Source: Haplodiscus bocki (Eukaryota). Taken from it: a DNA stretch of 64,000 nt. A program made the translations under genes and the position numbers. How positions within the stretch are numbered: the stretch's first letter is position 1; each line of letters starts with the position of its first letter. The DNA lies in the NCBI GenBank assembly GCA_965655095.1, contig OZ296648.1, forward strand, positions 189,906,001 to 189,970,000, in the 5' to 3' direction. The notes under the pieces are model-generated. The model worked only from the letters and a program-made list of their open reading frames with translations. It was not told the DNA's origin and ran no database searches. Of the stretch, positions 14,612-37,344 are shown piece by piece.

Positions 14612-14790
14612 CCAAAATTTTGACGGAAATTCGTTATCATGTTCATCTTCTGCCTCTTTTGTCTTTTTATTATGGATATTTAGGCTCAGAAAAGTTTACC
14701 AGCTTCGTTTTCCAACCAATTGTTTTACTAACGCTGCACTACACAAGCAGAATTGTTGTTTTTAATCCAATGGTGATCTTAAATAAAAGC
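14612..14790 (+). repeat. ~180-bp direct repeat, copy 1
   Basis: CCAAAATTTTGACGGAAATTCGTTATCAT...GGTGATCTTAAATAAAAGC, near-identical to 15771-15949. Confidence 0.9.
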
Positions 14791-15770
14791 CATATGCATT
14801 TAACCGGGCGGCATTAAATTTGTTCTTTGGGGGCGGTAGATACCGCAGTAAATATCCCAAAAGCTAGAACTCCAGGAAAACTTTTGAAGCAACAAACTGA
14901 GAACGGCCAAAATCGGTCCTGCCCGTAAATCTCAAAAGACTCGTGAAGGATTTTATCCTATATAAAGTTTCTCTCAAAAATTTATTTTTGAAATTGCGAA
15001 AGGGGTATGACGATGTTCAGGATTAGTATTTTCCGCCCATAGTTCAACATAGAACAAAAATAATTATTCACTCGCCACATATGTTCTTTTACGTAAACTT
15101 GTCAAGTGCACGATTCTGGAAAATTTTTTTTCTATGTGAGAGGAAGTCAGAAAAATTCTGCGGAATCCATTTTTTTCTACATTACACTTCTAACGAAATA
15201 TTTGTCATTAATGCATTTTGGCAAAATTGCAAAAAGCTAAATATTAGGGTTTCTCAGGGCAAATTCGTGAAATTTTATTTTTGAAAAATTAAAGTGCATT
15301 TGCTTCGAAACACTTTTCTGGACGCAATTTTCGCTTCTTCCAAAATCTTTCCAATTAGAAATTTCTAATTTCCAAAAAGAATCCATTTTTCCCTCTAAAA
15401 CGCGCCTTTAACAAAGTTAGGAAAAAAAGATCCGTGTGGTAGCGGTAGTTAGGCGTCTTGTTTTAATTCGTCTTTAACGCATTTTGACACAAAATTGCGA
15501 AACGGAATTTTTTTTTGTAGATTTCAAGGCATTGCGAAATGCCAAAGTTTTGAAACTTGCAAGATCAAATTGCCTGTGTATTATTTTTGTTCGTATTCAT
15601 TCACACTTCTAATTGGCGATAATTACTATGATGAGCTATGATTGTCAAAGATTTTATAAACGCTGCTAATTACCACTAATTAGAGGTATTTAAAATTTTG
15701 GGCCGAATTTGTTTTTGGTCCGAATCTGTCTCTGGTCCGAATTTGGCATTTGGTCCGAATTGTCGCATCA

Positions 15771-15949
15771 CCAAAATTTTGACGGAAATTCGTTATCATT
15801 TCCATCTTCTGCCTCTTTTGTCTTTTTATTATGAATATATAGGCTCAGAAAAGTTTATCGGCTTCGTTTTTCAACCAATTGTTTTACTAACTCTGCACTA
15901 CACAAGCAGAATTGTTGTTTTTAATCCAATGGTGATCTTAAATAAAAGC
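15771..15949 (+). repeat. ~180-bp direct repeat, copy 2 (preceded by four GG(T/G)CCGAAT units at ~15700-15762)
   Basis: Direct match to 14612-14790. Confidence 0.9.
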
Positions 15950-18383: not shown

Positions 18384-18900
18384 CCCGGGTTGACGTCTCA
18401 GAGACATTCAGCGCTGATCAGCTCTGATTCAGAATACTTTCAGGTCTGTTTCAGCGCTGTTCATTACCTGAAAATCTCTGAACAGCGCTGATTCAGCTCT
18501 GAACAGCGCTGAAAACGCAAATTTTCAGAGCTAAAAATCAGCGCTGAAACGGCGCTGATTTTCTCTGAAACAGAGCTGATTCAGAGCTGAACAGCGCTGA
18601 TTTTCTCTGAAACAGAGCTGATTTTCTCTGAAACAGCGCTGAAACACCAAATCTTCAGAGCAAAAAATCAGCGCTGAATCAGAGTTGTTTCAGCGCTGAT
18701 TTTCTCTGAAACAGAGCTGAACAGCGCTGATTTTCTCTGAAACAGCGCTGAAAAACCAAAATTTCGGAGCAAAAAAATCAGCTCTGAATCAGTGCTGTTT
18801 CAGCTCTGATTTTCCCTGAAACAGAGCTGATAACCACTGAAGCCTTCTGAAACAGCTCTTATCATTCCTGATTTTCCCCTGAGACAACGCTGAACATCCC
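18384..18900. repeat. Left TIR plus subterminal palindromic CAGCGCTG/CAGAGCTG repeats
   Basis: Many copies of (T/A)CAGCGCTGA and GAAACAGAGCTGA. Confidence 0.9.
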
Positions 18901-18934
18901 TGAAATCTGTCTTCCATTTCATGTCCTCACCGGA

Positions 18935-19575
18935 CTTTTGCAATTTTTCTCCAGGGAAACTTAGATATTACGCTTTCTGGATAATTATATCTTATTGCTT
19001 CTCGGCAAATACTAGATCTTTCATTTTTCGCGAAAATTCTGCAGGAAAGCTCAAGTCTTACGGTTTCTGGGAATTGCAATCTCATTATTTTTCCGCAAAA
19101 ACTAGATCTTATCCTCTTTTCGCAGATTTTCTCCAGGAAACCCCAGATCTTGAGATCTCTGGAAAATTAGATTTTAGTCTTTTTCCGCAAATTTCTGCAG
19201 GAAAGCTTAGATCTTACGCTTTCTGGAAATTTAGATAATATTCCGTTATGCCAAAATTAGATCTTTCTTTTTCCGCTAATTTTCTCCAGCAAACCTCTGA
19301 TCTTAAGCCCTCTGGAAATTTAGATTTGAGTCTTTTTTCGCAAATTTCTGCCGGAAATCTTACATTTTACGCTTTCTGGAAAATAGATCATTCATTTTTT
19401 TTGCAAATTTCTGCAGGTAACCTTCCATTTTATATGCTTTCAGGAAAATTATTGCCTATTCCTCGGCAAAACCTTGATCTCATTCATTTTTCGTGAGTTG
19501 CTGCAGGAAAGTTTAGATCTCACACTTTCTGGAATTTCAGATCTCATTCTTCTTCGGCAAAAACTAGATCTTTCT
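18935..19575. repeat. Second-tier subterminal array (CAAATTTCTGCAGGAAAG...TTAGATCT units), left
   Basis: Degenerate ~60/90-bp units rich in AGATCT. Confidence 0.85.
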
Positions 19576-19726
19576 AAAAACAGAAGAAAAAACATTTTTT
19601 ACAAAAAAAACGATAAAAAAGCATCATTATTAAAAATAGTCTTTTCTCAAGTCTTTCTGTCAAAAAAACTTCAGACACACTGACCGAAGGTGACCAAAGG
19701 CACTTCTCAAGTTCTGTAGGGGGAAT

Positions 19727-20187
19727 TCTTTGAGACTTGGAGGCTGTTTTCATGATGCATGTAGCATTGGGATACTTTTTGATTTCCTCCACGAACGTGT
19801 GATACTCAGTTGGAAGCTCAAACGTGGGGGGATAAAAGTCCTATTTGGCAGCTTCCAATTTGCCAAATTCTCTTTCGAGTTGCTTGCGGAAACGCTTGAA
19901 GTTTTTTACCATGAGGTTTTTGCGAGTAAGTTCGTAGTGGTTCCGATAATGACATATTCTGGCATGCTCGTCCATGTAACAGTCATCGAACACCTTTCTC
20001 ATCCACCCGACATCGCACCAATAGACATCCCAATCGGCGCCTTCTTCGGTGACGTGGGTCCCACTTTGAGTACATCCATGATGGTGTTAGTCAATCCACA
20101 TCTGAACCTGATATTGCGATCATAATTATTTCTCCTGTTGCTCCCTCGTCCACAGGGACCAATATTCGACACCTTGTTCTTGTTCAT
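19727..20187 (-). pseudogene. TTLL9: Captured intronless 5' fragment of tubulin polyglutamylase TTLL9
   Basis: Minus strand reads [17 protein letters not shown] [frameshift] [110 protein letters not shown]. This closely tracks the TTLL9 N-terminus ([34 protein letters not shown]). One frameshift, one stop, truncated. Confidence 0.9.
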
Positions 20188-20534
20188 GCTTCCTCTCAGC
20201 TCATATTTGGGGTCAACCAGGTTGAATTGAGATTTTAGTTCAATTTACAGCCTATTTATATTTATATAGAATTAATTATGATTCTGTAATACTTGGGGAG
20301 TTTTGACTAACTGTGAAATCGAGAACTAATTTTCACGACCAGATTCGGCACTTGTTATCTAATTATTAAGTTTATCACAACAATTAGGCTTTCGACAACC
20401 AGCGTATCCAAAACGTGACTCTGAACAAAAAACACGCATTGTTCCACGTAGAGAGATCTCAGGAAGTTCTCAAAACAACTTTTTTAGTTACAACCAAAGA
20501 AGAAAGCAGAGCAGAGCTCAAAAAGACATTTTCG

Positions 20535-22740
20535 GAACGTACTCAACGTCGTTTAGGAAAGTTTGTGTTTTGCTCAAAAAACAAAAGCTGTTTTTATAAG
20601 TATTCGATATCGCAAGACACCTCAAACGCAGGAGGTAAAGAGCCAAAGTATCAAACGTAGCCTTCGAAAGTTAGCGCAGGTAAAACCTTACACTGCAGTC
20701 GAACATAAATAGGTATTATTCCACGAAACGTTTGAAACTTACTCAACGTCGTCTTGGAAAGTTTGTGTTTTGCTCAAAAAACAGAAGTTGTTTTCATAAG
20801 TTTTCGATATCGCAAGGCACCTCAAACGCAGAAGGTAAAGAGCCAAAGTATCAAACGTAGCCTTCGAAAGTTAGCGCAGGTAAAACCATACACTGCAGTC
20901 GAACATAAATAGGTATTAATCCACGAAACGTTTGAAACTTACTCAACGTCGTCTTGGAAAGTGTGTGTTTTGCTCAAAAACAAAAGCTGTTTTTATATGT
21001 TTTCGATATAGCAAATTACCTCAAACTCAGGAGGTAAAGAGCCAAAGTACCAAACGTAGCCTTCGAAAGCTAGCGCAGGTAAAACCTTACACTGCAGTCG
21101 AACAAAAATAAGTAATATTCCAAGAAACGTTTGAAGCAAACTCAACGTCCTCCTGGAAAGTTTGTGTTATGGTAAAAAAACAAAAGCTGTTTTCAAAAGT
21201 ATTCGATATCGCAAGACACCTCAAACGCAGGAGGTAAAGAGCCAAAGAACAAAACGTAGCCTTCGAAAACTAGCGCAGGTAAAACCGTACACTGCAGTCA
21301 AACAAAAACAGGTATTATTCCACGAAATGTTTGAAACATACGCAACGTCGTCTTGGAAAGTTTGTGTTTTGCTCAAAAACAAGCTGCTTTTAGAAGTATT
21401 CGGTAGTGCAAGACATCTCAAACGCAGGAGGTAAAGAGCCAAAGTACCAAACGCAGCCTTCGAAAACTAGCGCAAGTAAAACCTTACACTACAGTCAAAC
21501 AAAAATAGGTATTATTCCACGAAACGTTTGAAACATACTCAACGTCGTCTTGGAAAGTTTGTGTTTTGCTCAAAAATCAAGCTGTTTTTATAAGTATTCG
21601 GTAGTGCAAGACATCTCAAACGCAGGAGGTAAAGAGCCAAAGTACCAAACGCAGCCTTCGAAAACTAGTGCAAGTAAAACCTTACATTGCAGTCGAACAA
21701 AAATCGGTTTTATTCCACGAATCGTTTTAAACATACTCAACATCGTCTTGGAAAGTTTGTGTTTTGCTCAAAAACCAAAAGCTGTTTTTATAAGTATTCG
21801 ATATCGTAAGACACCTCAAACGCAGGAGGTAAGGAGCCAAGGTACCAAACGTAGCCTTCGAAAAATAGCGCAGGTTAAACCTTACACTGCAGTCGAACAA
21901 AAATAGGTATTATTCCACGAATCGTTCGAAACATACTCAACGTCGTCTTGGAAGGTTTGTGTTCTGCTCAAAAAACAAAAGCTGTTTTTTTTAATTATTC
22001 GATATCGCAAGACACCTCAAACGCAGAAAGTAAAGAGCCAAAGTACCAAACGTAGCCTGCGAAAGCTAGCGCAGGTAAAACCTTACACTGCAGTCGAACA
22101 AAAATAGGTAATGTTCCATGAAACGTTTGAAGCAAACTCAACGTCGTCCTGGAAAGTTTGTGTTATGGTAAAAAAACAAAAGCTGTTTTCATAAGTATTC
22201 GATATCGCAAGACACCTCAAACGCAGGAGGTAAAGAGCCAAAGTACAAAACGTAGCCTTCGAAAACTAGCGCAGGTAAAACCGTACACTGCAGTCAAACA
22301 AAAATAGGTATTATTCCACGAAACGTTTGAAACATACGCAACGTCGTCTTGGAAAGTTTGTGTTTTGCTCAAAAACAAGCTGTTTTTATAAGTATTCGAT
22401 ATTGCAAGACATATCAAACGCAGGAGGTAAAGAGCCAAAGTACCAAACGTAGCCTTCGAAAACTAGCGCAGGTTAAACCTTACACTGCAGTCGAACACAA
22501 TTAGGTAATATTCCACGAAACGTTTGGAACATTCTCAACGTCGTCTTGGAATGTTTGTGTTGTGCTCAAAAAACCGAAGCTGTTTTTATAAGTATTCGAT
22601 ATCGCAAGACACCTCAAACGCAGGAGGTAAAGAGCCAAAGTACTAAACATAGCCTTCGAAAACTAGCGCAGGTTAAACCTTACACTGCAGTCGAACAAAA
22701 ATAGGTATTATTTCACGAAACGTTTGAAACGTACTCAACC
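20535..22740. repeat. ~200-bp tandem satellite, ~11 copies, inside the transposon
   Basis: Unit anchor ACTCAACGTCG at 20541, 20741, 20941 and onward to ~22733; high identity between units. Confidence 0.97.
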
Positions 22741-23299
22741 GAAATCTAGCTCAGTCTTCAAGAGTTGAATCAAAAACACTCGCACCGAGTACCAAGGGTG
22801 CTAAGACAAACGCAGCTTTCGAAAATGTTTTCTGTCCATGCCACAAACGCTGCAAAAAAAACGTCGACGTGGGAGCACTCTCGTTTCACTCAAAGCCCGA
22901 AAAAAGAGCTAGACCAGTAAGGACATCGTCAATTTACTCCTTCTACCCAAAGCTTTGAAAATGACTTGTCTAGTCCATGAAATGTCTCAATAGGCTTCGT
23001 TTTGTCGGTCTGAACAGAGAATTGAGAACAATGAATTCGTGAAAGACAAAACTGAATTAGGTCGACGAAGTTTCATATCGCAAACTTTTATTAAAACGTT
23101 AAAAATTCTCCGGGAAATATTAACGGCAGTTTCGCACCAAAACTTAGCAAGAACAAAAACATTTTTGCACCATAGAAACATTGATGATGAACTGAACATG
23201 TTAGTTTATTTGATCCTTCTATCAGGAGTATTTCGAATTTTTGCAACCTGACCAAAATCAATCAAGCACAAACTAGATATGTTGATTAATATTAGTTCC

Positions 23300-25632
23300 A
23301 AGTGAAGATAAGACATTGAAGCGATTTGAGCGCACATCAGCCTTCCATTTTGTCACCATAAGGGTTGACAACGCTAGATAATTGGCCTAAGAAGTTCATT
23401 TATGGTCAACAAAAGTTAGGACTTTGCCGAACCACGTTTCTGTACTGGTTTGAATGCAAAAAATTTTGACTATTTTCTGCATAGGTACGAGAGCTGTTTC
23501 GCACGTTTCAGAAGCAGCAAAATACAAACTCATTCACTCTTCCGGACCTTCGATATATTTGAAAGTTTTGAACAACCTGAGGAAAGCATACTTTTCCTCG
23601 CAGTCGAGTATACCAAGAAATTACAAAAAATTTGCCACAAATCCAATTTCCATTCTTTTCCACAAGGAGATTACCATTAAGGGCCTTGGTATTCCGACGG
23701 TAGCACGCTGAATCGGAGTACAGGCTTCCAATTCGAACTCTAGAATTTATATCAGCGTTTTTGTAAACGATTCGCGCCGCCTGAACAAACTCAGTTTCCA
23801 AAACATCTTGCTTGAAAGTGCGATTACCACTAACTTCAGCTGATTGTCCAGACCACGCCGTAACACTCTGGGAAATCGAATCATCTTCTATGTCTACCTC
23901 GAGAAGTGCTTGGTTTTCGAGGTAGCCTCGGCATATAACTTCGGTCTGACGCACTGTCCCCGTAAACAATTGTACAGGAAGTCGATTTGCAGATTCGAAA
24001 CACATTGCTGAAGACAAAAAAAACGGGGCCAAAATTTTTGACATAGTGACTCAAATGACGCAAACAGTGTAAATTTATTGTCTCACATTTCTCTGTTCCG
24101 AAAATAGCTACAGCCTCTCGGCAGAAACTATCTAAATGTATTTCAGCTACTAGTATGTCACTCTCAGTTGATGTTTCCAAAAGAAGCCTGACTCCAAACA
24201 CTAATTTCAAGTAATGGTGATATGTAGCTGCCGGAATGCGTCCTCGCAAAAGGATCACACCAACGTAAAAAAGGTAATTGACAAACTCTTTCGCTTTGAA
24301 ATCTTTCCGTTCTGCTACAGATCGCACGTTCCGCCCATGATCGATTAGTTCACAGGGAAGACTTAAACTAGCGGTTTCAGTAATGAAGGTCTCAGTTTCT
24401 TTTCTTTCCTCCATCAATTTTACATGCAGCTTGAGAAGGGCCTGGTAAACACCAATCAAGACGCAATGCATGTAATCAATACAAGCCGACAGCGGAAGAC
24501 CAGGCACCAATTCTGAGAAAGCACTTCGACCTTTCACACCAACGACATTGATTGAAGGTTGCCCGTTCGACTTCAGTTTTTCGGCCATATTCACGCATTG
24601 CCTATGGAAAACAGACTCGCGAACTTTGAAATCTTGGGAATAAGGGTTATAACAATGGTGTCCGTCAATAGTCGCACCCGGAGCAATGCAATAACAACAG
24701 CCGAAAAAACCGTTTTGTTGATACATTGAGAGACAATGTGACTTTGCAATCAAATCAAATATAATCATTATCACTCTCGATCGAATTGCGACCACATGGC
24801 CATTTTCATCTAGAAATCTATGTCGTTGCAATATTTCTTCGTGGATGTGAACCAAGAACTGCTCGAAGAATGGTTTTTTGCATCCAACGAACAAAGAAGC
24901 CAGCACGATATTTTTCCGAGACATTCACAAACGCTGCGGTAATTGAGCTATGCAAAACCAAATTGGCCAGAGACTTTTCTTTAATGAGGACTTGATGAAG
25001 GTGACTCCATCTGTGAAGAGCACAAGATCAATTGCAATTTCATCAAGTTCCTTAGAAAACGACAGTTTCTCTCGAGGAATATCATTCACATGGTTGTTTG
25101 CTCTACGCTCAGCATTGTAGTTTGTTATACTATTGAAGTTCCGTTTGACTACTGTTTGAATGAGATTTGAAATTTTCAAAAAACAGAATCTACAATTGGT
25201 TGTCTCAAATGCTGCTGCCGTGAGTTCAGCCAGCCTTTTCTTCGAAGAAGTTACCGCAGCAAAAGGGGACCGCAAATTGATACCAGGTGGGAGAAAACAA
25301 TGTAGCATTGTATAAAGTTCCTTCATTGCGACGTCGCTCAGTTTGAAACGGGAACAGAAACTTCTGACCATCAAAGAAGCGTTGCTCTGTCCAATAGAAG
25401 CGTTCGGATACAACAATTCTGACACCGGTTGACGCTCCCTATTGTCATCCGTAAAAGTAGCAGACTTTGATGGATAGCACTCAGGAAATGAAGATATTTC
25501 ATGTGAGTTGAACTCCATTTGGAGTGGTGCCTTCTTTCTGGGCGATGACGCCCAAACGTTATTTATAGTGCATGCAAAAGGAATGCTTTCGAAGTGCCCA
25601 GAATCAGTTTCTGAGTGACCACCAGGTGATTC
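23300..25632 (-). pseudogene. CACTA/EnSpm Tnp2-family transposase (disrupted)
   Basis: ORFs 24925..25518, 23881..24924 and 23508..24044 join across a TGA (probably CGA) and a frameshift at ~24020. Motifs LFTDG..KSS...SLWPI, FDLIAK, NGFFGCCYC, GVKG, IDYMH, KAKE, INLH.L.HL...V.NFGP and S.M.FES.N are typical of EnSpm transposases. 3' end approximate. Confidence 0.9.
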
Positions 25633-26307
25633 CTTTAAACAAAGAAATTGCTTCTCGAAATGTTCACAAAATAGTCAAAAGGACTCAAATTTCCAAAAAA
25701 TGCAAATCGCATCTTTTTTTCTCTCAAATGAAGCAGTCTGAAAACAAGACTTTTTCAAAAACAATTCAGAAGTCGCCACGTGCAAAAAAATTATGCCACC
25801 ACCTAAGAACCAATTTCTAACACAGAGACGAAGCTGGGCTTCTCAATACTTGCACCAGTGGAATATAAATGAACAAATCGAACACGTGAATTTGATTTTT
25901 TTAGAGACCACGCATGTTTCTGATTAAACTCACTTGAGTTGTAATTAAATATTTAGAAACAAGTGTAACAATTACGAACGGCTATAACCGTCACTTCCGT
26001 TGATAGTTTAGAGCAAGCGTTGATGCTGGTTAATAAAATACGGAACAGGGTTTCGCAGCTGCGCGAGAGCTCAAGAACAATTTTTTTCGACCCCTCGAGA
26101 GCACATGAAAAAATTGTCCGAAAAAAATTGAGTGAATAAACAGTATTCAGGCAATATCAGACTGTGAGTACATATGCGAGTTGTGAACGGCTCGGGGAAA
26201 AGCAAACGAAGGTTGCGATATAAAATTTGCTTGCGCAAATTCAATTAGTAGCGCAAAGCCATACAGACAAGCTCCTCACGTTCTCAATACCTACACTAGT
26301 CCAATCA

Positions 26308-27222
26308 TCAGAACTTTCCGTTTTTGTCGAGAAGTCCAGCGAAATTTGTTCCAGAAAAACATTCGACCTTAAGCAATTCCTGGGTTGAGTCAAGTGTCAG
26401 GTCATTTGGCGAGGGAAAACCAATTAACGCTACTGGCGCCGAAGCAGGATCTTGGATTGGTTCCAGCGGTATCAAAGCATCCAGAGTCATTGGGTTAAGC
26501 AGTCGCTGTTCATACTCCGGGATCTTAGCAACTTTAGACTTTCGCCTCGGAAAAGAAGAAAGTAAATGATTATTGCATTTCTGGATGACCTCCTTCGGAT
26601 TGCCTACGGACAATGAATCGACAGCAGAGGACGGTAACGGAAAATCGGCAGCTCTGCGTCGAGAATTGCATGTTGAGCAAAAACATTCGTTTACGTCAAA
26701 AAACTCGTCGCCGTACTTGACCAACAACTCATCTCCTTTTCCAATTTTGTTGATAGTTTCAATTTGAACAACTTTGTCCATCCTGTCAAAATTGTAACGA
26801 GAATTTGGCTCGCAATCCGAATTAAGAAAGCAAACAGATCCCAGCATCAAATGGGGACCTTTTTGATTCGATGTTAGATGTTCTGTAGACAGACTTGGAA
26901 CAGAATCCGGTACGGGAGCCAAGTAACCAAGAGGTCCATTCCTGAGGATGGTTCTCGGCTGTATCACAACTTCGCTAGTGTACGTCAATTCATAGCCACC
27001 AAACTTATCATGACGTATCTGGTAATCCTTCAACCTGGAATATGACTCTTTCACTGTTTCGTAACAATTTCTCAACTCTGGATTCATTCTCGTTTGGGTT
27101 TGTAAAATTCTGGAGGATTGCAAACGTACAACAGTTTGCGCTTCACCCCCTCCGTATTCGACGAGTTCTTTGACCAGTTGTCCATCACACTGGGCAAGGG
27201 TCATCCAACGGAAAAACGACAT
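26308..27222 (-). CDS. SET-domain protein, SUV4-20/Set9 (H4K20 methyltransferase)-like
   Basis: HLMLGSVCFLNSDCEPNS...INKIGKGDELLVKYGDEFFDVNECFCSTC parallels SUV4-20 LWLGPAAFINHDCRPN...RDIEPGEEISCYYGDGFFG..CECYTC. ATG (MSFFRW) at 27222; the frame is open from 27324. Confidence 0.8.
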   Translation of the reverse strand: MSFFRWMTLAQCDGQLVKELVEYGGGEAQTVVRLQSSRILQTQTRMNPELRNCYETVKESYSRLKDYQIRHDKFGGYELTYTSEVVIQPRTILRNGPLGYLAPVPDSVPSLSTEHLTSNQKGPHLMLGSVCFLNSDCEPNSRYNFDRMDKVVQIETINKIGKGDELLVKYGDEFFDVNECFCSTCNSRRRAADFPLPSSAVDSLSVGNPKEVIQKCNNHLLSSFPRRKSKVAKIPEYEQRLLNPMTLDALIPLEPIQDPASAPVALIGFPSPNDLTLDSTQELLKVECFSGTNFAGLLDKNGKF

Positions 27223-28810
27223 TGCACAAAAAACACGCAAGTTCTTCAGGAAAACAAGCAAAAGGGAGTGAGAACGATTACTTTTCGGAAAAAAAACTCG
27301 GGTAAGAAAATCGTTTTCACCCAAATAACCTGCATCATTTTACTCAGCAGTTACTGCGAAAAACAACTGAACATGAAGCCTTCTACAATTCAGACTTTTC
27401 TTTTTTTCACTTTTCCAATTTTTTGTCTCTAGTATACAGGTTTTCACTGGGTAAAACTGTCGGATATGCACAAGTTAATCAACATCTCGACGATTCATAT
27501 GCTCCCTCCTGTAGTCCCGTAGAAAAAGTTCCCATGAAAACCTTCAAAAATTCGTACGAAAACGCTCATGTGCACACTGGGCAAAGAACCAAAATGCCAA
27601 GGGCAAAGTCCCCGAGTAACTATGAAAGTATTTAGTACAGATGAAAACTTTTCAGAGTCCAAACAGAATTTTTTTGCATTGCTGCATCCGAAAACAAAAG
27701 AAGAAAAAAACAGCTCACTATATTAATATTTCAACTTGAGGCTAGAAAATGGTGGATTAAAAATTCAACAGTAACTGGTTATTCAGTGAAACCATCAAAA
27801 ACTTAATCACTAACGCAACCCAATACATTGTAGTTACCTATATCATTTCCACCACTTGTTTAAAAGAAGCATACCAGATTGAAATTGAAACAATGACCCA
27901 AAATTTCAAATAGTTACAGAAATCATGGACATTATGAAAAACTCCAGCCGAAAAGCGTATATAAAAAAACAAGTTTTAATCAGGACTTCAAAGACATGTC
28001 GCATCCGAGCGTCAATCCCACTTTGGATTCGCCTAGGATTTTTTTGTTCTCGCAGATCTTGACAAAAAACGCATAAATTGGTAAAGGCGAAAGTTCAACT
28101 TCTTGGGCAATCTTTTCTAAAAATAAATCAATGAAAAATAGACAGTTAGAGCGGATAACTATAGCACTAGACTAATGACGCGACACGTCTTGCAGCAATT
28201 ATCAAAGCAATATTATCAACATCAGTGGTTGTTCAAGCCAAATCATTGCAATGCATTAAGTTTCTCAAGCAGTAAAACGGTTGGATAGAAAGAAGAAATT
28301 GATCACGGTAGAAGAAAACTGATAAATATCATGTCACCATGAGGGTGGAGGTAGCACGAGGGAGTTAAGATTGAGTCTGACTCATGCCAAATGGAATACT
28401 CAGTCAGCTCGAAAAAATCATTAGAAAACGTCGAGGTTTAAATCAAGATTTTGAGGAGATTTTGCAACGAAGAGGTCTCAATCGTAACTAGAAGAGTTCC
28501 GTTAATCTTTGCAAATCACAAAAATCTTGACAAAGAAAACCAGAAAATGAATGCAAAACAGTTGACCTCGTTGCATTCAACTTCATCAAAAATGCAAGAA
28601 AAATAAACACCGACAAAACTGTAAGATAGCAGTGGACAATTGATGTGACACCTATTGAAGCAATTGTCAAAGCAGCATTGAAACTGTTTGCTCAAGCTAA
28701 ATCATTGTAAGGTTAAAAACTCAAACCTAGTCAAATGGGGTGGGGCGGAAAGAAAAAATTGAGCCTGGTAACAAGAGCTGATAAATCTTATCACCATGAG
28801 GGTGAAATTT

Positions 28811-30568
28811 TCACGCATCTACTACGATTGCGCCTGAATTCCTTTTGGAAGAGCTGAGTCGTTTCCTTTTGTTGGGTGGTTTCTCGAGTGGAACTTCCAC
28901 ACGTGGTTCACAGCTCGGCACTTCAAGTTGCGTAGTCTCATCGTGGACAGGCGTGGAAGCTTGCACATGCGCTGCAGTTTTATCTTTTGTATCAACAGAT
29001 TTACGTTTTGAGCTCCACTTATTTGCCATGTTTTTGAAGCTGGCTTTCGCTTCACTTGAGGCAGTGAGAGGCCGCGTGGGATACTTCTTCTTTTTGGCTT
29101 CTAAATAGAAGATGCTTTGAAGATTCAAACCCATAGACAGCAAAGGTGTCACAAAATTTCATGTAAACTCAATGTTTCGGAGAGTACGAATTAGCCGAAA
29201 ATACGAACCTTCCCAGACACTCTTTCGATCTTCCGGAAATTCTTCTCTATCTGTTTGTTTTGTTGGTGAAATCATGCAGCGTGGAAGCTGTTCCGAAGTG
29301 AAAATCAGCCTACCGATGTGACGCCCGTACTTACCGGCGCTTGTAGTGTTAAATTTCAACAAATTTTTGTCCGTCCCAGAGAACTTGCGGCCCGTAATCC
29401 TCCTGTGGATCAGTGTTAAACGGAATAAGGTTTTCTGCTTGTTTCACCTACAAACAAACAATGACTAGTGCGAATTCACCCCGGTTGGAGGACATACCGG
29501 AAAACAATCTTTTACTCGTATATGTACATAAAATAGACGATTATAAGATTGGTTCACAAAATGTAGCATAGAAGTCTCAAGCAGGAAACAATTTTGTGTA
29601 TGTGAACTTATGTTCATGCCTAGTTTTTGTTAAATTGGGTTGATTTTTTCCGGTACGAAGGCATTTAGTCTCCTGAGGAAATCTGTAGTTTTTAGTCGAC
29701 AAACAAAATCCCAGGTCGGTCACTAAACAGATCATAGAACGCTTGAAAGCAACTTACATCATCTTTCAAGGCTTTCGCTATTTTACAGGATTCATCGACG
29801 TTTCTTAAAGACAACTTTTTCATCGTCGCATTCAGAGAATTAAGGGACCCTTCGACTCTTTCCATTAGCCTTGTATTTCTATTAAAAGCTTGAGTCAGTT
29901 CCAGGTGCTGAAACTGAAAACAAAACTTTCATACGAGATCAAAATTTGAGAGTCAAAAGCAGAGAAAACTTACATTCTCCTGACATTCTGCAGGATTTTG
30001 GGTTTGTACGTAGTTCTCTACGTCTGCCGGAGTCAAACATTTTTTTCTTTGATTAGCAACTGGCGTGACTGACGGAAACTCTGTTGGAACGAAATCTGAT
30101 AAAACTTTCGCCAGGACAGCGTCATTGTCAACGATTTGCCCAACATCATCGAATTACAAGACCTAAGAATTATGTAAGTTCTATCGTCTTCAAAGTCAAA
30201 AATGCAGCCACCAACAGGATCACAAGTTTGGGAGAATTACTCTCCTGCACGGATAATAATTTTGCCTGCGATCCAAGCGGTATCGTACAGCAGGTAGGAT
30301 TTGAAAGAATCACTTCCTCGTGATCGAAATGAATGTTTTCCGTAAGGGTATTTGGATTATCCAAGTTAAATCTCAGGGTCGGCTCCGGGAAAGAAATATA
30401 TTTACCAGCGCACTCTTTTGACATCTCCAGAAGATAGGCATCTACAAAAACTTCCGGTCCTCTCGCGTACACTTTGCAGGTGAAAACCTGCCTGCCATTT
30501 TTCACTCTCACGGTGTTACCTACCTTCAAAAGAAAACAGAACCTAAACCACATAGCTTCCTGAGACAA
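28811..30568 (-). pseudogene. Spliced accessory gene: N-terminal domain, coiled coil and BEN-like C-terminal domain
   Basis: GT-AG introns, e.g. 29101-29208 joins SAGKYGRHIGRLIFTSEQL...KSVWE to EAKKKKYPTRPLTASSEAKASFKNMANKW. Coiled-coil exon ~29758-29913 (RLMERVEGSLNSLNATMKKL). Frameshift near 29365. Confidence 0.6.
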
Positions 30569-32358
30569 CTACAAACCTTCACTGGATGCGAGTCAAAGGA
30601 AGAGTTTCAGGATTAGCAATGTTATGATGTCGATCAAGGTATGAAGAATTGGGACGCAAACAATGCAAAGGATCGCGATTATTTACGTTGAGAAAATTGT
30701 AACTTGACAAATGTTGCTGTTACGCTGTCTTCATTATCTCCTAAAAACTAATTTATACAAAGAGCGAAACAAACCGTCAAGTCAGCTCTTTCTTGCAGGG
30801 TTGCGATGATACTATCTGATAGCAATGACTTAGAGAAGCTCCTTCCGTCGTCGAGACAGTACAGCAGCAAATGCACGGACTTCAAAGTCTCTCTGATGGA
30901 TTGATCTACGTCAGTGAATGTGCGATTGAGGTGCATTGGAGGCTTTACCGAGCGCCTCGAACTTGTGATTTGAGAATGCATTTGCGGAAACGAAAAAAAA
31001 GACAACTCGCAAAAAAACTGCTTCTGGTACATTTTTTTCATCGGTTTCATTTCACCAAATTCAGTAAAAAGCCTACTATTGTCATTTTATCATATAACAT
31101 CGAATTGTCTACTTTTTCCCGGGCACATCAAGTTAAAGCGTGCAATCACAGTTTGTAACTAGCACAGAGAAATACTGAAAAACGCCATAAGACCATTGCG
31201 ACACTTTTCGGTACTGTGAGACCAGGTAAACTCGGACGGAAATCACATCTAATGGATTATTTTTCGACACCATCATTTTTCGAAAACACCAGTAGAGTCC
31301 TGCTAACGAATTTTTTTTGGTATGGCGACTCTATGGTTCACTGAAACTTTTGCGCCAGAATGATGGTCAGCGACGAATTTGAGCTTTTTGTCGTTTTCCG
31401 TGGTAAAGTATACTACTACGAAAGAAAACAAATCCCTCTGACCGTAGAAATTCTCCGCAAAAGTGCCAAATCGGCGTGAACATCACTTTTCCAAAGGAAA
31501 GTCACACCTTTACTGTTCTTCGGAACTCGCAGAACGCTGTTTCGACAATCCCCACCGAAAATTCCCTTTTAAAGTCCAAAAAAAAATCAAAAATTCCCAG
31601 ATAGAAAATCTCCGTTTGAACACACGGAAATTCTCTTTGTGAACACCAGCTGGACAGCCGGAAATTAATGGCCTCATGTCGGAATGAAATTTTGAATTTT
31701 GACGAGATCGATTAAAATTTTCCTCTGGAAATCAGTTTCGAGGTTACCTGTTTTTGTCTAATAATGTAATATTTAAGCTCAGAGCTAGCCTCCTCGTATC
31801 GTACAACCACTGTTTTCTCTTAAATTTTCATATTTATTTTTGAGCCATTTCTGAAGCTCCATCGATGGAAAACATAGCACCACTATTGTTGTTCTCGTTT
31901 GACTTAAACTTAAAGATAAGTAGACTTTCGACATTAATCACAGAGCCCAAAAAACGGGATATTATTTCGACTACTGAGGTATATTCAAATTATCGATCGA
32001 GTTTGGCAATTGATTCAATTATTTTCCAAGTGAACAGGTAAGGTGAATATATTCAATAAAACATAGGTACCAAAAACGCATATCAACAGAACGAAAAAAA
32101 CAATTGCGGTAAATGGCATCCGCTATATACAGATGAAACATCATAACTCTCAAAATGAACAAAGGAAACTCAGCAAAGTTCAACATTAAGTACAAGCGAT
32201 CAGCATGAAGGTGATCCACGGAGTCTAATCAAGTTCAAATAAACCAGTCAATATTCCACTTCAAAATGAAGCACTTGAAATGAAAAACAACAATGAGCAT
32301 TGTTGATTCAAAACCAATCAGTTGTCAATTCGTTAGATGAGAACAGATGTCAGGAACT

Positions 32359-33161
32359 TCAATTCATTATCTCTTGCATAATTATTGTCTGCAGTTGGCG
32401 AAGTCCATTTTTCTTCAAACGTACCCCATCTTCGGAATCGATGATATTGGCACACGACAGCATCCTTCCAACGCCAACAAAACAGAACCCACAACTCCTC
32501 CGGTTGTGGTACAGAATTTCATTCAGTTCCCTAATGTCCAGATTGAAGTCGTTGAGCCTTCTGGTCACTCCCAGAACGAACACTTGCTTGCCTTGGTAAC
32601 GAAGCTCTTGGGACACACAGCAGATATCATGAAAAACCTAAACATTGGATTTTATTGGGTGAGCAAGTGTCTGGGCCCATAGATACACTCAGAAAAAGAC
32701 GTTCCGCAAACGAGAGCTTCATGAAGCTAGTACGCGTTTGACGATACTTTTGTTTCACCGGTAATTTTCCGAAGGAATTAGAAATAGCTTCAACTCGTAA
32801 GTTCAATTCAACGGTTCAAAATTCAGAAAATCCACTGTACGTTCAGAAATAAAAAGGTACATGAACATTTGGAACGATTTCACATTTCAATCATTAAGAA
32901 AAAAGTTATTATTTCTATAGGCGCCATTTGCGAGCGGACAGTTCCATTTTTTGCACGCCTCGCAAAACAATTGCCGCCTGCCAGTAGAAGAGCAGTAGAG
33001 CAGTTCAGATTGAGATAAATTATGGCACTTAGTACATCCATCAACCTCCTACCTGACACAGACAGTACATTGCATTGAGTGAAAATCATCTCTCCGAGAA
33101 AAGAATCACCAGCCAGAAAATATTCACTGGACTGCTGCTTCACAGTGCATTTGAAAGTCAA
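32359..33161 (-). pseudogene. Spliced SGNH/GDSL-hydrolase-fold (OSK-like) gene
   Basis: Block I LAGDS, block II SVSG and block III LLAGGN in 32913-33161. Block V DGVRL (DGVHL-like) in exon 32359-32637, acceptor TTTAG at 32638. The donor appears mutated (AT at 32912). Confidence 0.65.
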
Positions 33162-36059
33162 ACTTCCACTTTTGAGAACGAACTGAAAAAATGGTCAGTG
33201 GTAAACAATTTTGCGGTAATGGCAATGTCAGCGGAGTCAAAAACTGTGATTACTTTTCATCGTAAGATACTACTGACTGAAATCCTGAACCGGAGGCTTC
33301 TCTATTACACAGCGGGCGTTCAATGTTTTCCATCAGGGAAGCATTTTGCTGCTCTTTCTTCTGCTTTTTCAAATCAAGTTGTTGGCGAAGTGTCAGGGCA
33401 CCAGAAAACTGCAACATCACATTCACTTTGAAAAAATGCTTCCTCCAAGGCAAAATTTTATACAAAGGAAACCGAGAAAAAATTCCAGACCCTTGCACAT
33501 AATGCGTATCAAAACTGCCCATTTTTCAGACCTCAAAAACTAGTAAGAAATTGAAAACTATAATTACAGAAAACGACCATATCGGAAGTGTCGCTGAACA
33601 ACTGTATCTTCCTCCATCCGTCAATTTGTTCGCTGAAGCTGTTTTTGAAAACATTCTCGGTTCCGGAAACATTCAGTTAGATTAAAAAGACCAGAAAATT
33701 GCATCGCAAAAAATCCAGATAATTCACATACAAACTGGGCTACGCAAAAACTGCACCTAGAGGAAAACTGTTCACTTAATCCAGTTCTAAAAAGTTACCC
33801 ACCAGCGGGACTCCAACACCGAAGAAAGTAAGCAAACTCATTTTTTCCATCAAAATTCAGGCTTCAAAATATCTCGCGAAAGTTCCATTTTTGAATTGTG
33901 TCATGGAATTTGGTTCCGCAACTTCTTCAAGTTCTTCATATATGACGTATGAAACAGATTCGAATCAGGACATGAGAAATGATAAAAACGACATGCTTCC
34001 ACCTTCAGAATTTCTAGCAAACATGAGTTGGCAGCGCCCACACAAAAAAGAAACTTCAATCGTAATAAGACTGCGTTGGCCAGCTCAAACCTTCTTCACG
34101 TTTCAGACAAAGAAAGAAAACTGGTTTTGACTTCATCAAAGTGACTTGAAACGTTCATGACGCAAAAAATTGCGGCTTTAATTCGAACGGGATTTGTCGA
34201 AAAAAAGGAGGAGTACTCATTCGACTCACAGAGAGTCTTCGACATAGAATTATTCTGTGCTGCCTACGAATGCTTAACCTATCAACTTGCTAGACCTGTA
34301 AGATCTTTTCAAATGTCTACAACCGTAAGACCATCGCTTTACATATGGGATTAAAGGTCATCATTTGTTCGAAACGGAGGCTTGGTTAAGGCTTCTAAGA
34401 AAGATCATTTTTCAACGCTGTCATTTTTTTCAACAACCATTCGGAAGCGCTTGAAATCGAATTCAGGTTTCAATCGACTGCGATTGTACTTGGAGTAATT
34501 ACGGTATTCTACAGTTGTCCTTCTTTAGCCCAGTCATTTTACAGTCCAGTACATAAGAATAGCTCCCGTTTCAAGACAAACTTAACTTAGTTTTTCGAAC
34601 GTTATCAGAAGCTTAAGCAATACATGCCAATATTACATGCTACCGATCGACATCTTCTACTCCACATTGGTAAAAGAGCAAACCTTTAATCTTATGGTGA
34701 ACCCGGGTCGACCCGCCGGGTGGGAGTTGCTAATAACACACCTCTTCTACATGCAACTCGCTATTCCTGACACTACAGCCTCAGTATGCCATTTCTCAAC
34801 AAAATTCTTGTTCGTCGTTCAGCATCCTAAACCCGGCCTAGAAATTAATGGCTTCGTACCGAGAGTTGCCGGAAAGTTTTTGAGTTGGATACAATTATGC
34901 TCAAAATAAATCTCGCTAGTTGCATCATTACATGTTTTACATTAATGTCATGAACTCAGCTAATTGAAGGTTATTTCAAGCGCTTGTGGAGAAAATGTGA
35001 AACCATTCTCGGATGAATATAGAGTGGACTCCTGTTATGGCGCTACGATGGGGAGCAGAAAAAACAGACTTTGTAACCAGTATACGATGCTACAAGCAGA
35101 ACTAAAGCCAATAAGTTAAAACGTAGAGAATTTTTCGGCAATATTTTTCAACAAATTTTCGAAGGTGTGAAAATACCTGAGGAAATGTTGGTTCATTTCC
35201 GTTCTTTCTCCCCCAGCCCTAGAGACGAAATTCTTATTTTCCCTAAGATGATTCTGAGCTGCTCAGTATGGTTTAAATTTCTGTTCAACGTCAATGGAAT
35301 TATGTGTTTACTTCAATTAGCTTCAGTAAGCAATCAGTTTTTTGGAAGGTACTTTAGCTTCGTGATTTATGTGGAATGTCTACTGACTCGCAAAAGATCT
35401 AGTCAGTGAACAGACTCGTAGCAGTAACTAATTTTCGACTCGGGGGATTATCCACGGGGTCGGAAATAACGGAAAAGACCCGAAAAAACTCATTAATCCC
35501 GTTCAAATTCAATTGGCAATTTGTAGAATAAGGTTCCCCTGAGATAATATGCTTTCTCGATATTCAGATCTTACTTTCGGCAAAAATTAGACCTCCTTCA
35601 CTTAGAGCATTTTTTGGAAAATCTTTTGATCTAACGCTTTCTGGGATTTTCATTTAACCATGAAATAACAGTGCGCACTGAAGCCAGTATTCGTGAGGAA
35701 AAACATTATGGAGCCCGCGATCAAGCATGGGCAATCAGAAAAAAAGGCACCATTACACTGCAACTTGCAGAGCGTCCTTACAGTGTCAATAACGGTCCCA
35801 TATAATAAACGAAAAGCATCTAAAACATCAGCAAGTGGAGGTAAGATTTATAAATTAGGTCTTCGTATTGCATATTTAACTACATCGACTAGTTAGAAAA
35901 TGAATTGAAAATTATCAAGGAAGGCTCGTCCAGATTTGTTAATTGACAGATGGATGAGAAGTACAATAGTATATAAAAAAATTCAAAAAGAGAAGGAGAG
36001 AGGTTGAAGTTCATCGTCAAGTGGATAGCTAGTCCAGATGAAACACGACAGCCTTCCCT

Positions 36060-36760
36060 CAACTACAGCGCTTTCTAGGAAAAGACATCTTATTCCTTTT
36101 CCGCAAACTTCTGCAGGAAATCTCAGATCTTAAGCTTTCCTGGAAATTTAGAAATTATTCCGTCATGGCAAAATTAGATTTTGTTCTCTTTCCGCGGATT
36201 TTCTCCAGGAAACCCCAGATCTTAAGCTCTCTGGAAATTTAGATTTTAGTCCTCCGCAAATTTCTGCGGAAAAGCTTAGATCTTATCTTTCATGCAAATT
36301 TAGAAATTATTCCGTTATGGCAAAAACAGATATTATTCTGTTTCCACAGATTTTGTCCAGATAACCCCAGATATTAAGCTCTCCGGAAATTTAGATCCTA
36401 GTCTTTTTCCGCAAATTTCTGCGGGAAAGCTCAGATAGTACGCTTTCTGGAATTTTAGATAATATTCCGTTACGGCAAACTTAGATCTTATTCTTTTCCC
36501 GCAGATTTGATCCCGAAAACCGCAGATTTGATCCCGAAAACCGCAGATTTGATCCCGAAAACCGCAGATTCGATCCCGAAACCCCCAGATTTTAAGCTCT
36601 CTGGAAATTTAGATCTTGGTCTTTTTTTCCCAAATTTCTGTGGGAAAGCCCAGATCTCACGCTCCCTGGAAATTTAGATCTTATTCCGTTTTGACAAAAC
36701 TTGAACTGTTCTCAGGAGTTTTCTCCAGGAAACCTTAGATCTGACGCTTTTGGAGATAAT
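36060..36760. repeat. Second-tier AGATCT array, right (includes ~4x 21-bp CCGCAGATTTGATCCCGAAAA)
   Basis: Same unit and same orientation as 18935-19575. Confidence 0.85.
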
Positions 36761-37344
36761 CAGCCCTGTTCAGTGCTGTTTCAGAGTTGTTTTTCTCTGA
36801 AACAGAGTTGTTTCAGAGCTGTTCAGGGCTGTTTTCTTCTGATTCAGTGCTGTTCAGCGCTGGTCAAAATTCGTCACATTTTGGTCTGAAATAGTAAAAA
36901 AAACACTAATTAACACAACTTCTGCTTTTTTTTTCAGTCCACTTTTTACTCAAAACCCTACATTTCAGCCTTTTTAATATTCTACAGGTCACGTGCGACC
37001 AAAAAGCATGAGAAAAAGGCGGGTGCGCCAATTCGAATTTTTGGCTGAATTTTCGCCGGAATGATTTTTTTCATAGCTGGTACACTCCAAAAGAACATGT
37101 TTTTCGTGATCCCAATACTTTTTCGAACTTACACGAAGCATTTTCGTCGGTTTCTCAATTCGTTTTGATCCAGCGCTGAACAGCGCTGATTCAGAGAAAA
37201 CCAGTGGTGAACAGCTCTGAAACAGCGCTGATCAGCGCTGGTTTTCTTAACCCATTCTGAAACAGCGCTGATCAGCGCTGAAATTTATAAAATCTCTGAA
37301 ACAGCGCTGTTCAGCGCTGATTTGCTCTGGGACTTCAACCCGGG
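36760..37344. repeat. Right subterminal CAGCGCTG repeats and right TIR
   Basis: CAGCGCTG clusters at 36760-36862 and 37170-37344. Confidence 0.88.

What the first reader, a model, noticed from the sequence alone, without database searches (positions are those of the whole stretch)
23300..27222. SUV4-20-like SET domain inside a CACTA transposon, splice-joinable in frame to the transposase (SETMAR-like architecture)
Seen: an open SET ORF with the post-SET Cys cluster (NSDC...YG...CFCSTC) lies ~0.7 kb upstream of the EnSpm transposase, on the same strand and inside the TIRs. A phase-0 donor (AAG|GTCGAA, GT at 26367-26366) and acceptor (TTTAAAG|GAA, AG at 25634-25633) would give ...TQELLK|ESPGGHSETD...LQMEFNS, open into the transposase. 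Known: SETMAR is a host SET-mariner fusion, and SUV4-20/Set9 write H4K20me2/3. Inference: a mobile transposon family that carries or fuses its own histone-lysine methyltransferase domain, possibly for chromatin marking or targeting. The canonical NH motif is NS here, so catalysis is uncertain, and the donor site is non-optimal.
Basis: partly seen in the sequence, partly recalled or inferred. Interest (0 to 1): 0.9.

Follow-up and report, generated by a model that had tools for sequence, protein, structure and literature searches.

The report
Transposase carrying a SUV4-20-type SET domain
This is a dead copy of a 19-kb cut-and-paste transposon whose transposase family carries a histone-H4K20-methyltransferase-like (SUV4-20-type) SET domain at its N-terminus. 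In relatives the two parts are one uninterrupted ~1000-residue protein, a combination I found in no paper.

Summary
An open SET ORF starts at ATG 27222 on the minus strand. It lies 0.7 kb upstream of, and in the same frame as, a DDE transposase. Both sit inside an 18,961-bp element (18384-37344) bounded by 20-nt inverted repeats.

The SET is specifically SUV4-20/KMT5-like. A family profile hits SUV420H1/H2 at E 1e-25, against 1e-7 for other SET families. The AlphaFold model's 15 best matches are all SUV4-20.

The decisive result came from an exhaustive search. It finds uninterrupted 900-1100-residue proteins with this SET at the N-terminus and a Mirage-type (DUF1258/Transposase_21) transposase behind a disordered linker. 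The fusion is therefore a family trait. It has been kept under long-term purifying selection: synonymous sites are saturated, and pN is 0.27-0.42.

In this window's lineage a 735-nt stop-filled spacer separates the two parts. An in-frame GT-AG pair is kept in most copies, so splicing is plausible but untested.

The window copy itself is dead: one stop and at least one frameshift in the transposase. Its seven copies decay near-neutrally.

The termini start CCCGGG, not CACTA. The likeness to SETMAR is only architectural.

The scan noted another copy of this pairing elsewhere in the same genome. No literature on this fusion was found.

The parts
18384..37344 (-). Whole transposon copy, 18,961 bp. 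Its genes are on the minus strand.
   Evidence: The terminal motif occurs exactly twice, inverted. L001 is colinear at about 90-93% identity and ends at window 18383. The 3' termini of L001 and L009 have different flanks.
18384..18403 (+). Terminal inverted repeat at the 3' end of the element, CCCGGGTTGACGTCTCAGAG. Short CAGCGCTGA-type subterminal repeats follow, up to about 18860.
37325..37344 (-). Terminal inverted repeat at the 5' end of the element, CCCGGGTTGAAGTCCCAGAG. The flanks are AAA|...|AAG, so the target-site duplication is 2 bp (AA) or an imperfect 3 bp.
26368..27222 (-). SET exon, 285 codons, intact in this copy. ATG is at 27222. The SUV4-20-like N-helical, SET and post-SET core is 27222-26647; an unconserved tail is 26646-26368. 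Key residues: Ser112 (26889-26887, equivalent to Suv4-20h2 Ser161), Asn134-Ser135 (26823-26818, NS where cellular enzymes have NH), Tyr143 (at the Phe191 position), Tyr170 (26715-26713, catalytic Tyr), and zinc Cys137/180/182/185.
25633..26367 (-). Spacer of 735 nt (a multiple of 3) with many in-frame stops. It is a putative intron, GT at 26367-26366 and AG at 25634-25633. If it is retained, the SET ORF runs on 19 codons to TGA TGA at 26310-26305.
   Evidence: GT is kept in 6 of 7 copies and AG|G in 5 of 7. Both are also kept in L011. Indel density is 28.6 per kb against about 14 per kb in the exons. It does not recur elsewhere as a repeat.
23508..25632 (-). Transposase exon: a DDE transposase of the CMC superfamily, Mirage/DUF1258-like. 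The catalytic candidates are D at 25011-25009 (LFTDG), D at 24756-24754 (IFDLIAK) and E at 24084-24082 (CETINLH). It is a pseudogene.
24925..24927 (-). In-frame TGA. Five of the six other copies have AGA (Arg) here; L010 shares the TGA.
24020..24030 (-). A 1-nt insertion in a T-run, absent from all six other copies, that shifts the transposase frame.
20536..22739 (.). Internal tandem array: 200-bp unit, 11 copies, 89% matches, downstream of the transposase. L001 has far fewer units.

Best explanation
Window 18384-37344 is a decayed copy of a cut-and-paste DNA transposon of the CACTA-Mirage-Chapaev (CMC) superfamily, on its Mirage/DUF1258-like branch.

Shown: the transposase lineage carries a SUV4-20/KMT5-type module (N-terminal helical domain, SET, post-SET zinc cluster) at its extreme N-terminus. 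About 175 disordered residues join it to a RAG1-core-like DDE transposase. In relatives this is a single uninterrupted ORF of about 900-1100 residues, and the SET has been kept by purifying selection as strongly as the transposase core.

Inferred, about 55%: in this window's lineage a 735-nt spacer sits in the linker. It is removed as a phase-0 GT-AG intron to give a SET-transposase of about 990 residues. Intron retention would give a stand-alone 304-residue SET protein, an arrangement that recalls the alternative splicing of En/Spm.

Inferred, about 40-50%: the SET module engages the histone H4 tail and the nucleosome. It thereby tethers the transposase to chromatin, methylates H4K20 locally, or both. 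The outcome could be target choice, self-marking, or help with break repair, since H4K20me2 is a docking mark for 53BP1/Crb2.

The window copy cannot act. Its transposase has a stop and at least one frameshift. Its intact SET ORF is a lucky survivor: the other six copies each have 1-6 lesions in that exon.
For: SET identity:
- Pfam SET scores above threshold. KMT5B/C are the best PDB hits.
- A 51-sequence family profile hits SUV420H2/H1 at E 1e-25 (93 bits), against 34 bits for the next SET family.
- The AlphaFold2 model has pLDDT 87 and pTM 0.77. Its top 15 Foldseek hits are all SUV4-20, with TM 0.53-0.65 over about 235 columns.

Fusion:
- The exhaustive search returns N-terminal-SET proteins of about 1000 aa. 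They also carry DUF1258/Transposase_21.
- The P0058 gene is one 3108-nt ORF.
- The P0058 model shows SET at 1-192, a disordered stretch at 193-368, and a folded transposase matching the RAG1 core at E 1e-9.
- On the tree, 48 of 51 transposon SETs form a clade (SH-aLRT 98) apart from the cellular KMT5 set. Fused members are spread through that clade and also occur basally.

Selection:
- Between subfamilies pS is 0.76-0.84 (saturated) against pN 0.27-0.42. The SET is as constrained as the transposase core.
- The Ser161 and Tyr217 equivalents and the zinc cysteines are invariant or nearly so.

Mobility:
- Inverted repeats bound the element.
- Seven colinear copies are 86-93% identical, and three 3' ends have different flanks.

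Splice:
- The two parts share a frame and the sites are conserved.
- The spliced length of about 992 aa fits the 908-1108 aa of relatives.
Against: - No RNA evidence exists for the splice. The donor GTCGAA is weak.
- L011 conserves the spacer as well as it conserves the exons (75-80% against 75-77% nt), so that comparison does not mark exon boundaries.
- The linker is not conserved between families.
- The canonical NH of the SET cofactor motif is NS throughout the main clade. The Phe191 position is Tyr. Catalysis is therefore unproven.
- Within this family omega is near 1: SET core 0.74 (p 0.09) and transposase 0.97.
- I found no inverted repeats for the intact fused genes. L002 and L004 may be the same locus seen in two assemblies. 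The mobility of the intact fused versions therefore rests on their cluster holding broken copies on other contigs.
- The host organism was not identified.
Confidence: 0.75

Rival explanations
1. Two-gene arrangement. In this lineage the ancestral fusion was split by the 735-nt insertion. SET (304 aa, stop at 26310-26308) and transposase (starting at ATG 25518) are now made as separate proteins, with SET acting in trans as an accessory protein, as in HarbingerS or the Plavaka accessory gene PAG2.
For: The SET ORF ends in a double stop 19 codons after the proposed donor. An ATG at 25518 is kept in 4 of 7 copies. The weak donor is GTCGAA. Separate SET accessory genes are known in other transposons (PMC12730594; bioRxiv 10.1101/2025.02.11.637652).
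Against: Both parts are in the same frame and the spacer is a multiple of 3. The frame is open for 38 codons upstream of the ATG, right up to the acceptor. All deeper relatives are single ORFs. ATG 25518 is TTG in L005, GTG in L009 and GTG in L011.
Confidence: 0.28
2. Dead on arrival. The spacer insertion killed the gene. This family spread only as a non-autonomous passenger, mobilised by intact relatives, so the SET here never had a function.
For: Omega is about 1 for the transposase in all seven copies. All copies are broken. A nonsense codon is shared by two copies that are not close relatives, the window and L010.
Against: Near-neutral decay after insertion is what copies of any transposon show. 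The distinct subfamily L007 has extra DNA in the same place, yet keeps the SET core with pN 0.27 against pS 0.76. That implies selection continued after the spacer arose.
Confidence: 0.12
3. Recent capture of a host KMT5 gene fragment (Pack-type gene capture), unrelated to transposase function.
Against: The transposon SETs form their own deep clade, apart from the cellular KMT5 set. They are 23-48% identical to one another. They sit at the exact N-terminus of intact transposase ORFs in many assemblies. They show long-term purifying selection.
Confidence: 0.03
4. The ~1000-aa SET-transposase proteins are domesticated host genes of the SETMAR type, and the window copy is a pseudogene of one.
For: L002 and L004, from two samples, are 99.4-99.5% identical over 17 kb including flanks, which could mean one conserved locus. 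No inverted repeats were found around them.
Against: The window family has inverted repeats, at least seven dispersed decayed copies and different flanks. The P0058 cluster includes fragmented copies on other contigs, and cluster 9 has 24 members on many short contigs. The DDE residues are conserved.
Confidence: 0.07

Closest known systems
SUV4-20 / KMT5B-KMT5C / Set9 (cellular H4K20 methyltransferases)
   Same: The fold matches over the N-helical domain, SET and post-SET. The profile hit is E 1e-25. The Ser161 and Tyr217 equivalents and the four zinc cysteines are conserved.
   Different: It forms a separate clade from cellular KMT5. NH is replaced by NS in the main clade. Tyr stands at the Phe191 position. 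No homology was detected to the acidic-patch arginine-anchor C-terminal domain. It is fused to a transposase. Its activity is untested.
Mirage / CACTA (En/Spm) / Chapaev (CMC) transposons
   Same: The DDE transposase is homologous to DUF1258 (the Mirage group, PMC3985635) and to Transposase_21. The element has inverted repeats, subterminal repeats, a large size and a short target-site duplication.
   Different: The termini begin CCCGGG, not CACTA. The transposase carries an N-terminal SET domain, which I found described for no CMC element.
SETMAR / Metnase
   Same: The order is N-terminal SET followed by a C-terminal DDE transposase. In this window the two are possibly joined by splicing.
   Different: SETMAR is a single-copy primate host gene made from a SUV39-like SET gene and an immobilised Hsmar1 mariner. 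Here the fusion is the transposase of a mobile, multi-copy family. It has a SUV4-20-type SET and a CMC transposase, and in relatives it is one ORF.
Transposon-borne SET genes: HarbingerS, oomycete MuDR, Helitron captures, red-algal Plavaka PAG2
   Same: These are mobile DNA elements that carry a SET histone-methyltransferase-like gene (PMC12730594; bioRxiv 10.1101/2025.02.11.637652).
   Different: In the sources I read, the Plavaka and HarbingerS SET genes are called accessory genes and the Helitron ones captures; for the oomycete MuDR families the source says only that SET genes were incorporated. Their hosts are oomycetes, algae and others. Here the SET is a domain of the transposase polypeptide, of SUV4-20 type, in a Mirage-like lineage whose relatives are mostly from animals.
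Chromodomain integrases of chromoviruses (functional analogy only)
   Same: A chromatin-recognising module is appended to a DDE integrase or transposase. From general knowledge, it biases where insertions land.
   Different: That module is a reader domain at the C-terminus of a retrotransposon integrase. This one is a writer-type fold at the N-terminus of a DNA transposase. Nothing about this analogy was tested here.

Membership tests
SET domain (PF00856) | Pfam model match above the gathering score | tested here: met
   26.9 bits against a cutoff of 22.4 for the window ORF. Fused relatives score 25.7-44.7 bits.
SET domain (PF00856) | Canonical NH(S/D)C cofactor motif | tested here: not met
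   The window reads LNSDC. NSDC is conserved through the main clade. Only the deep members P0180 and P0145 keep NHSC.
SET domain (PF00856) | Catalytic tyrosine in SET-C and the post-SET zinc cysteines | tested here: met
   Y170, C137 and C182 are at least 90% conserved in both alignments. C180 is invariant in A1 and C185 is at least 90% conserved in A2. Y170 maps to Tyr217 of Suv4-20h2.
SUV4-20 / KMT5 subfamily | N-terminal helical domain plus SET plus post-SET fold, with the best match to SUV4-20 structures | tested here: met
   The Foldseek top 15 are all SUV420H1/H2 (TM 0.53-0.65). The profile scores 93 bits against 34 bits for other SET families.
SUV4-20 / KMT5 subfamily | Active-site Ser161 (hydrogen bond to the substrate lysine) and Phe191 at the switch position (PMC3874154) | tested here: inconclusive
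   The Ser equivalent (S112) is invariant. The Phe191 position is Tyr in the window and in most members.
SUV4-20 / KMT5 subfamily | Orthology with cellular KMT5 genes | tested here: not met
   The transposon SETs and 15 cellular KMT5-like proteins (profile hit to KMT5B at E 8e-81) fall on opposite sides of one branch. 48 of the 51 transposon SETs form a clade with SH-aLRT 98.
SUV4-20 / KMT5 subfamily | H4K20me1-to-me2 methyltransferase activity | not testable with these tools
   This needs a biochemical assay on peptides or nucleosomes.
CMC superfamily (CACTA-Mirage-Chapaev) transposase | Homology to Transposase_21 / DUF1258 with a DDE triad | tested here: met
   Relatives at E 1e-98 to 1e-29 carry PF06869 and/or PF02992, and so do the fused proteins. 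The LFTDG, FDLIAK and ETINLH motifs are present in the window. The window fragments alone score below the Pfam cutoff.
CACTA / En-Spm proper | Termini beginning CACTA, and a 3-bp target-site duplication | tested here: not met
   The termini are CCCGGGTTGA... at both ends and in L001 and L009. The flanks AAA/AAG fit 2 bp or an imperfect 3 bp.
Mirage group | DUF1258-type transposase (PMC3985635) and a 2-bp target-site duplication (the latter from my own knowledge of Repbase classification) | tested here: inconclusive
   In 7 of the 10 fused relatives scanned DUF1258 scores above Transposase_21; in P0110 it scores below, P0145 hits DUF1258 only and P0178 hits neither. One AA/AA flank pair is compatible but is a single case.
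SETMAR-type host fusion | Single-copy domesticated host gene, mariner transposase, SUV39-like SET | tested here: not met
   The family is multi-copy, with inverted repeats and decayed copies. The transposase is of CMC type. The SET is of SUV4-20 type.

The most novel reading that the evidence does not exclude
An active family of animal-type DNA transposons whose transposase is itself a working H4K20 methyltransferase, or a dedicated binder of the H4K20me1 nucleosome. It would write or read a chromatin mark at its own excision and insertion sites. It could use this to choose targets, to recruit 53BP1-type break repair, or to set its own chromatin state. If so, this is a self-marking transposon, and its intact ~1000-residue members are ready to test.
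Probability: 0.3. Interest if true: 0.85.

Novelty: new variant of a known kind. Interest (0 to 1): 0.66.

Why it matters
Transposons that carry chromatin enzymes are rare, and the known cases are mostly separate accessory genes. SETMAR, the textbook SET-transposase fusion, is a domesticated host gene. Here the fusion is the transposase of a mobile family. It is old, diverse and under selection, and it is of the H4K20-specific SUV4-20 type.

That makes a long-standing question directly testable: do DNA transposases read or write histone marks to choose targets or to manage the breaks they make? Intact members such as P0058 (1035 aa) can be expressed, assayed on nucleosomes and compared with SET-deleted versions in transposition assays.

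The finding also matters for annotation. Such copies can be mistaken for KMT5 paralogues in gene sets.

Tried and rejected
1. Searching for CACTA termini: the one CACTACAA hit is no better than chance. The true termini are CCCGGG....
2. A four-copy analysis suggested the SET core is under selection while the transposase is not (omega 0.49 against 1.10, Fisher p 0.009). With seven copies the difference faded (0.74 against 0.97, p 0.29), so I dropped the claim.
3. L011 as independent support for the exon boundaries: protein-level homology appeared to stop and start at the splice sites. At nucleotide level the spacer is as conserved as the exons, so it gives no discrimination.
4. Linker homology between the window and the fused relatives: none found.
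5. Homology of the post-SET tail to the acidic-patch anchor region of SUV420H1: none found.
6. Inverted repeats around the intact fused genes in L002, L003, L012 and L013: none convincing.
7. A word-indexed search with the P0058 SET region found only P0058 itself.
8. Pfam on other ORFs of the element found nothing.
9. The protein atlas gave only generic SET or transposase neighbours and no host taxon. The organism remains unidentified.
10. Six literature searches found no description of a SET-CMC transposase fusion. Repbase and Dfam could not be consulted.
Full report
**1. Observation**

On the minus strand, ORF 27324-26308 (338 aa) is open. Its first Met is at 27222. It scores 26.9 bits against Pfam SET, above the cutoff of 22.4. 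Its best solved-structure relatives are KMT5B/SUV420H1 and SUV420H2, at E 6e-7 to 7e-6 over the C-terminal SET half and post-SET.

Downstream lie three transposase fragments. They are 25518-24925, then 24924-23881 after an in-frame TGA at 24927-24925, then 24044-23508 after a frameshift.

AAG|GT has GT at 26367-26366. The acceptor AG is at 25634-25633. The exon resumes with ESPGGHSETD. The 735 nt between them hold many in-frame stops.

**2. The element**

The 20-nt motif CCCGGGTTGANGTCNCAGAG occurs exactly twice in the window, inverted, at 18384-18403 and 37344-37325. None is expected by chance. The termini are not CACTA.

The flanks are AAA| and |AAG. That is compatible with a 2-bp duplication or an imperfect 3-bp one. 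Subterminal CAGCGCTGA-type repeats and an internal 200-bp x 11 tandem array are present.

**3. Other copies**

The closest transposase hits led to contigs of ENA sample ERZ26859043. L001, L005, L006, L008, L009 and L010 are colinear with window 27381-23400 at 86-93% identity. Each has the same SET-spacer-transposase layout.

L001 ends at the same terminus as the window. L001 and L009 show the same CCC(G/A)GGTTGACGTCTCAGAG end next to unrelated flanks. These are therefore independent insertions of one family. More diverged relatives in the same sample, L007 and L011, also have extra DNA between SET and transposase.

**4. The decisive result: the fusion is a family trait**

An exhaustive HMMER search with the SET ORF gave 458 hits, 75 of them at E <= 1e-10. 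Many are proteins of 650-1100 aa in which the match sits at residues ~5-195.

Pfam finds SET plus DUF1258, with or without Transposase_21, in P0058, P0063, P0074, P0075, P0076, P0098, P0110, P0145, P0180, P0186 and P0151. P0058 is encoded by one uninterrupted 3108-nt ORF. Four 1035-aa members and several broken ones share its 90% cluster. Another cluster has 24 members, including 1063-1068-aa proteins. One of these, P0221, recurs in two independent samples.

tblastn of the fused proteins onto the window places SET (27207-26629) and transposase (25464-24016) in the same frame, -2. About 700 nt of extra DNA lies between them.

An AlphaFold2 model of P0058 (pLDDT 71.5) shows three parts. A confident SET module spans 1-192. 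A disordered linker spans 193-368. A folded transposase follows. The transposase part matches the RAG1 core (E 1e-9, TM by target ~0.5) and the N-terminal part matches SUV4-20.

**5. What kind of SET**

A profile of 51 transposon SETs hits SUV420H2/H1 at E 1e-25 (about 93 bits). The next SET families reach only about 34 bits.

The model of the window's SET has pLDDT 87 and pTM 0.77. Its 15 best Foldseek matches are all SUV4-20, with TM 0.53-0.65 over ~235 columns that include the N-terminal helical domain.

I mapped residues using the Suv4-20h2 structure paper (PMC3874154) and the alignments:

| Suv4-20h2 feature | State in the transposon family |
|---|---|
| Ser161 (hydrogen bond to the substrate lysine) | Conserved Ser, invariant in the 16-sequence alignment A1 and at least 90% in A2 (window S112) |
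| Tyr217 (catalytic) | Conserved Tyr, likewise (Y170) |
| Four zinc cysteines | Conserved |
| Phe191 (switch position) | Tyr |
| NH of the NHDC motif | NS throughout the main clade; NHSC survives in deep members (P0180, P0145) |

The domain thus looks constrained, and its cofactor pocket is altered in a conserved way. Whether it catalyses anything is open.

A maximum-likelihood tree puts 48 of the 51 transposon SETs in one clade (SH-aLRT 98). That clade is apart from 15 cellular KMT5-like proteins, whose profile hits KMT5B at E 8e-81. Fused members are spread through the clade and also occur among its basal neighbours. The fusion is therefore ancestral, not a recent capture.

**6. Selection**

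Between subfamilies, synonymous sites are saturated while nonsynonymous change is limited. For the SET core, window against L007 gives pS 0.76 and pN 0.27. Window against P0058 gives 0.84 and 0.36. The transposase core is similar, at 0.84 and 0.38.

Within the young family the copies decay almost neutrally. Counting private substitutions in seven copies gives omega 0.74 for the SET core (p 0.09), 0.59 for the tail and 0.97 for the transposase. The SET-transposase difference is not significant. An earlier four-copy signal did not hold.

Every copy has a broken transposase. Only the window copy has an intact SET exon; the others carry 1-6 lesions there.

**7. Is the spacer an intron?**

For:
- The two exons share a frame, and the spacer is 735 = 3 x 245 nt.
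- GT is kept in 6 of 7 copies and AG|G in 5 of 7, behind a conserved pyrimidine-rich tract. Both sites are also kept in L011.
- Indels are twice as dense in the spacer as in the exons, 28.6 against ~14 per kb.
- The spliced product of about 992 aa matches the 908-1108 aa of relatives.
- The intron would fall in the disordered linker.
- The spacer-bearing lineage went on to diversify.

Against:
- There is no RNA evidence, and the donor is weak.
- L011 conserves spacer and exons equally.
- An ATG at 25518 and a double stop after the SET tail would also suit two separate genes.

I put splicing at about 55%, a two-gene arrangement at about 28%, and a dead, non-autonomous lineage at about 12%.

**8. 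Classification and novelty**

DUF1258 corresponds to the Mirage group and clusters with Transposase_21/CACTA (PMC3985635). The element is therefore a CMC-superfamily, Mirage-like transposon rather than a canonical CACTA.

SET genes are known in HarbingerS, oomycete MuDR, Helitrons and red-algal Plavaka elements, where the Plavaka and HarbingerS ones are described as accessory genes and the Helitron ones as captures. SETMAR is a host fusion. Six literature searches found no SET domain fused to a CMC transposase. Repbase and Dfam could not be checked. I rate it a new variant of a known kind.

The scan's notes record another copy of this pairing on another piece of the same genome (s1-364342). 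They also record SET-zinc-finger-tyrosine-recombinase elements there (s1-364275 and others). I did not test their relation to this SET clade.

**9. Mechanism: shown and inferred**

Shown:
- The domain architecture.
- The SUV4-20 affinity of the SET.
- Conservation of the substrate-lysine and catalytic residues.
- The flexible tether.
- Mobility of the window's family.

Inferred:
- The module brings the transposase to H4 tails and nucleosomes, with or without methyl transfer.
- It may bias targeting or mark the element.
- It may create H4K20me2 near the double-strand breaks that cut-and-paste transposition makes.

Noticed in passing
window 20536-22739: A 200-bp tandem array (11 units, 89% matches) lies inside the element, downstream of the transposase. 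L001 has far fewer units. The P0058 locus has an analogous ~340-bp array downstream of its fused gene (L002 about 14440-20080).
   Followed up: partly
window 24925-24927 and the homologous site in L010: The nonsense codon TGA (AGA in five other copies) is shared by the window and L010, which are not each other's closest relatives (88% against 93% for window-L001). This could be a parallel mutation, gene conversion, or spread of an already-broken master copy.
   Followed up: no
window 29775-32219: About 2.4 kb of the element is absent from the otherwise colinear copy L001. It is either a nested insertion in the window copy or a deletion in L001.
   Followed up: no
L012 665-1915 and L013 552-1802: A 416-aa ORF with no Pfam match lies on the same strand about 1 kb upstream of the intact 1063-aa SET-transposase gene. 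It is conserved in two independent samples and may be a second protein of that element.
   Followed up: partly
P0058 model residues ~370-1035: The transposase part of the fused protein matches the RAG1 core and BbRAGL structures by Foldseek (E 1e-9 to 1e-7, TM by target ~0.5). This is a structural link between Mirage-like CMC transposases and RAG1/Transib.
   Followed up: no
same genome, other pieces (earlier notes s1-364275, s1-359267, s1-361964): The genome also holds elements that fuse a SET domain to zinc fingers and a tyrosine recombinase. None of the transposon-type SET hits scanned here carried a recombinase domain, so whether the two SET lineages are related is open.
   Followed up: no
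L011 about 7130-8667: An older copy (~75% nt identity to the window) has a ~1.5-kb insertion inside the spacer/putative intron.
   Followed up: no
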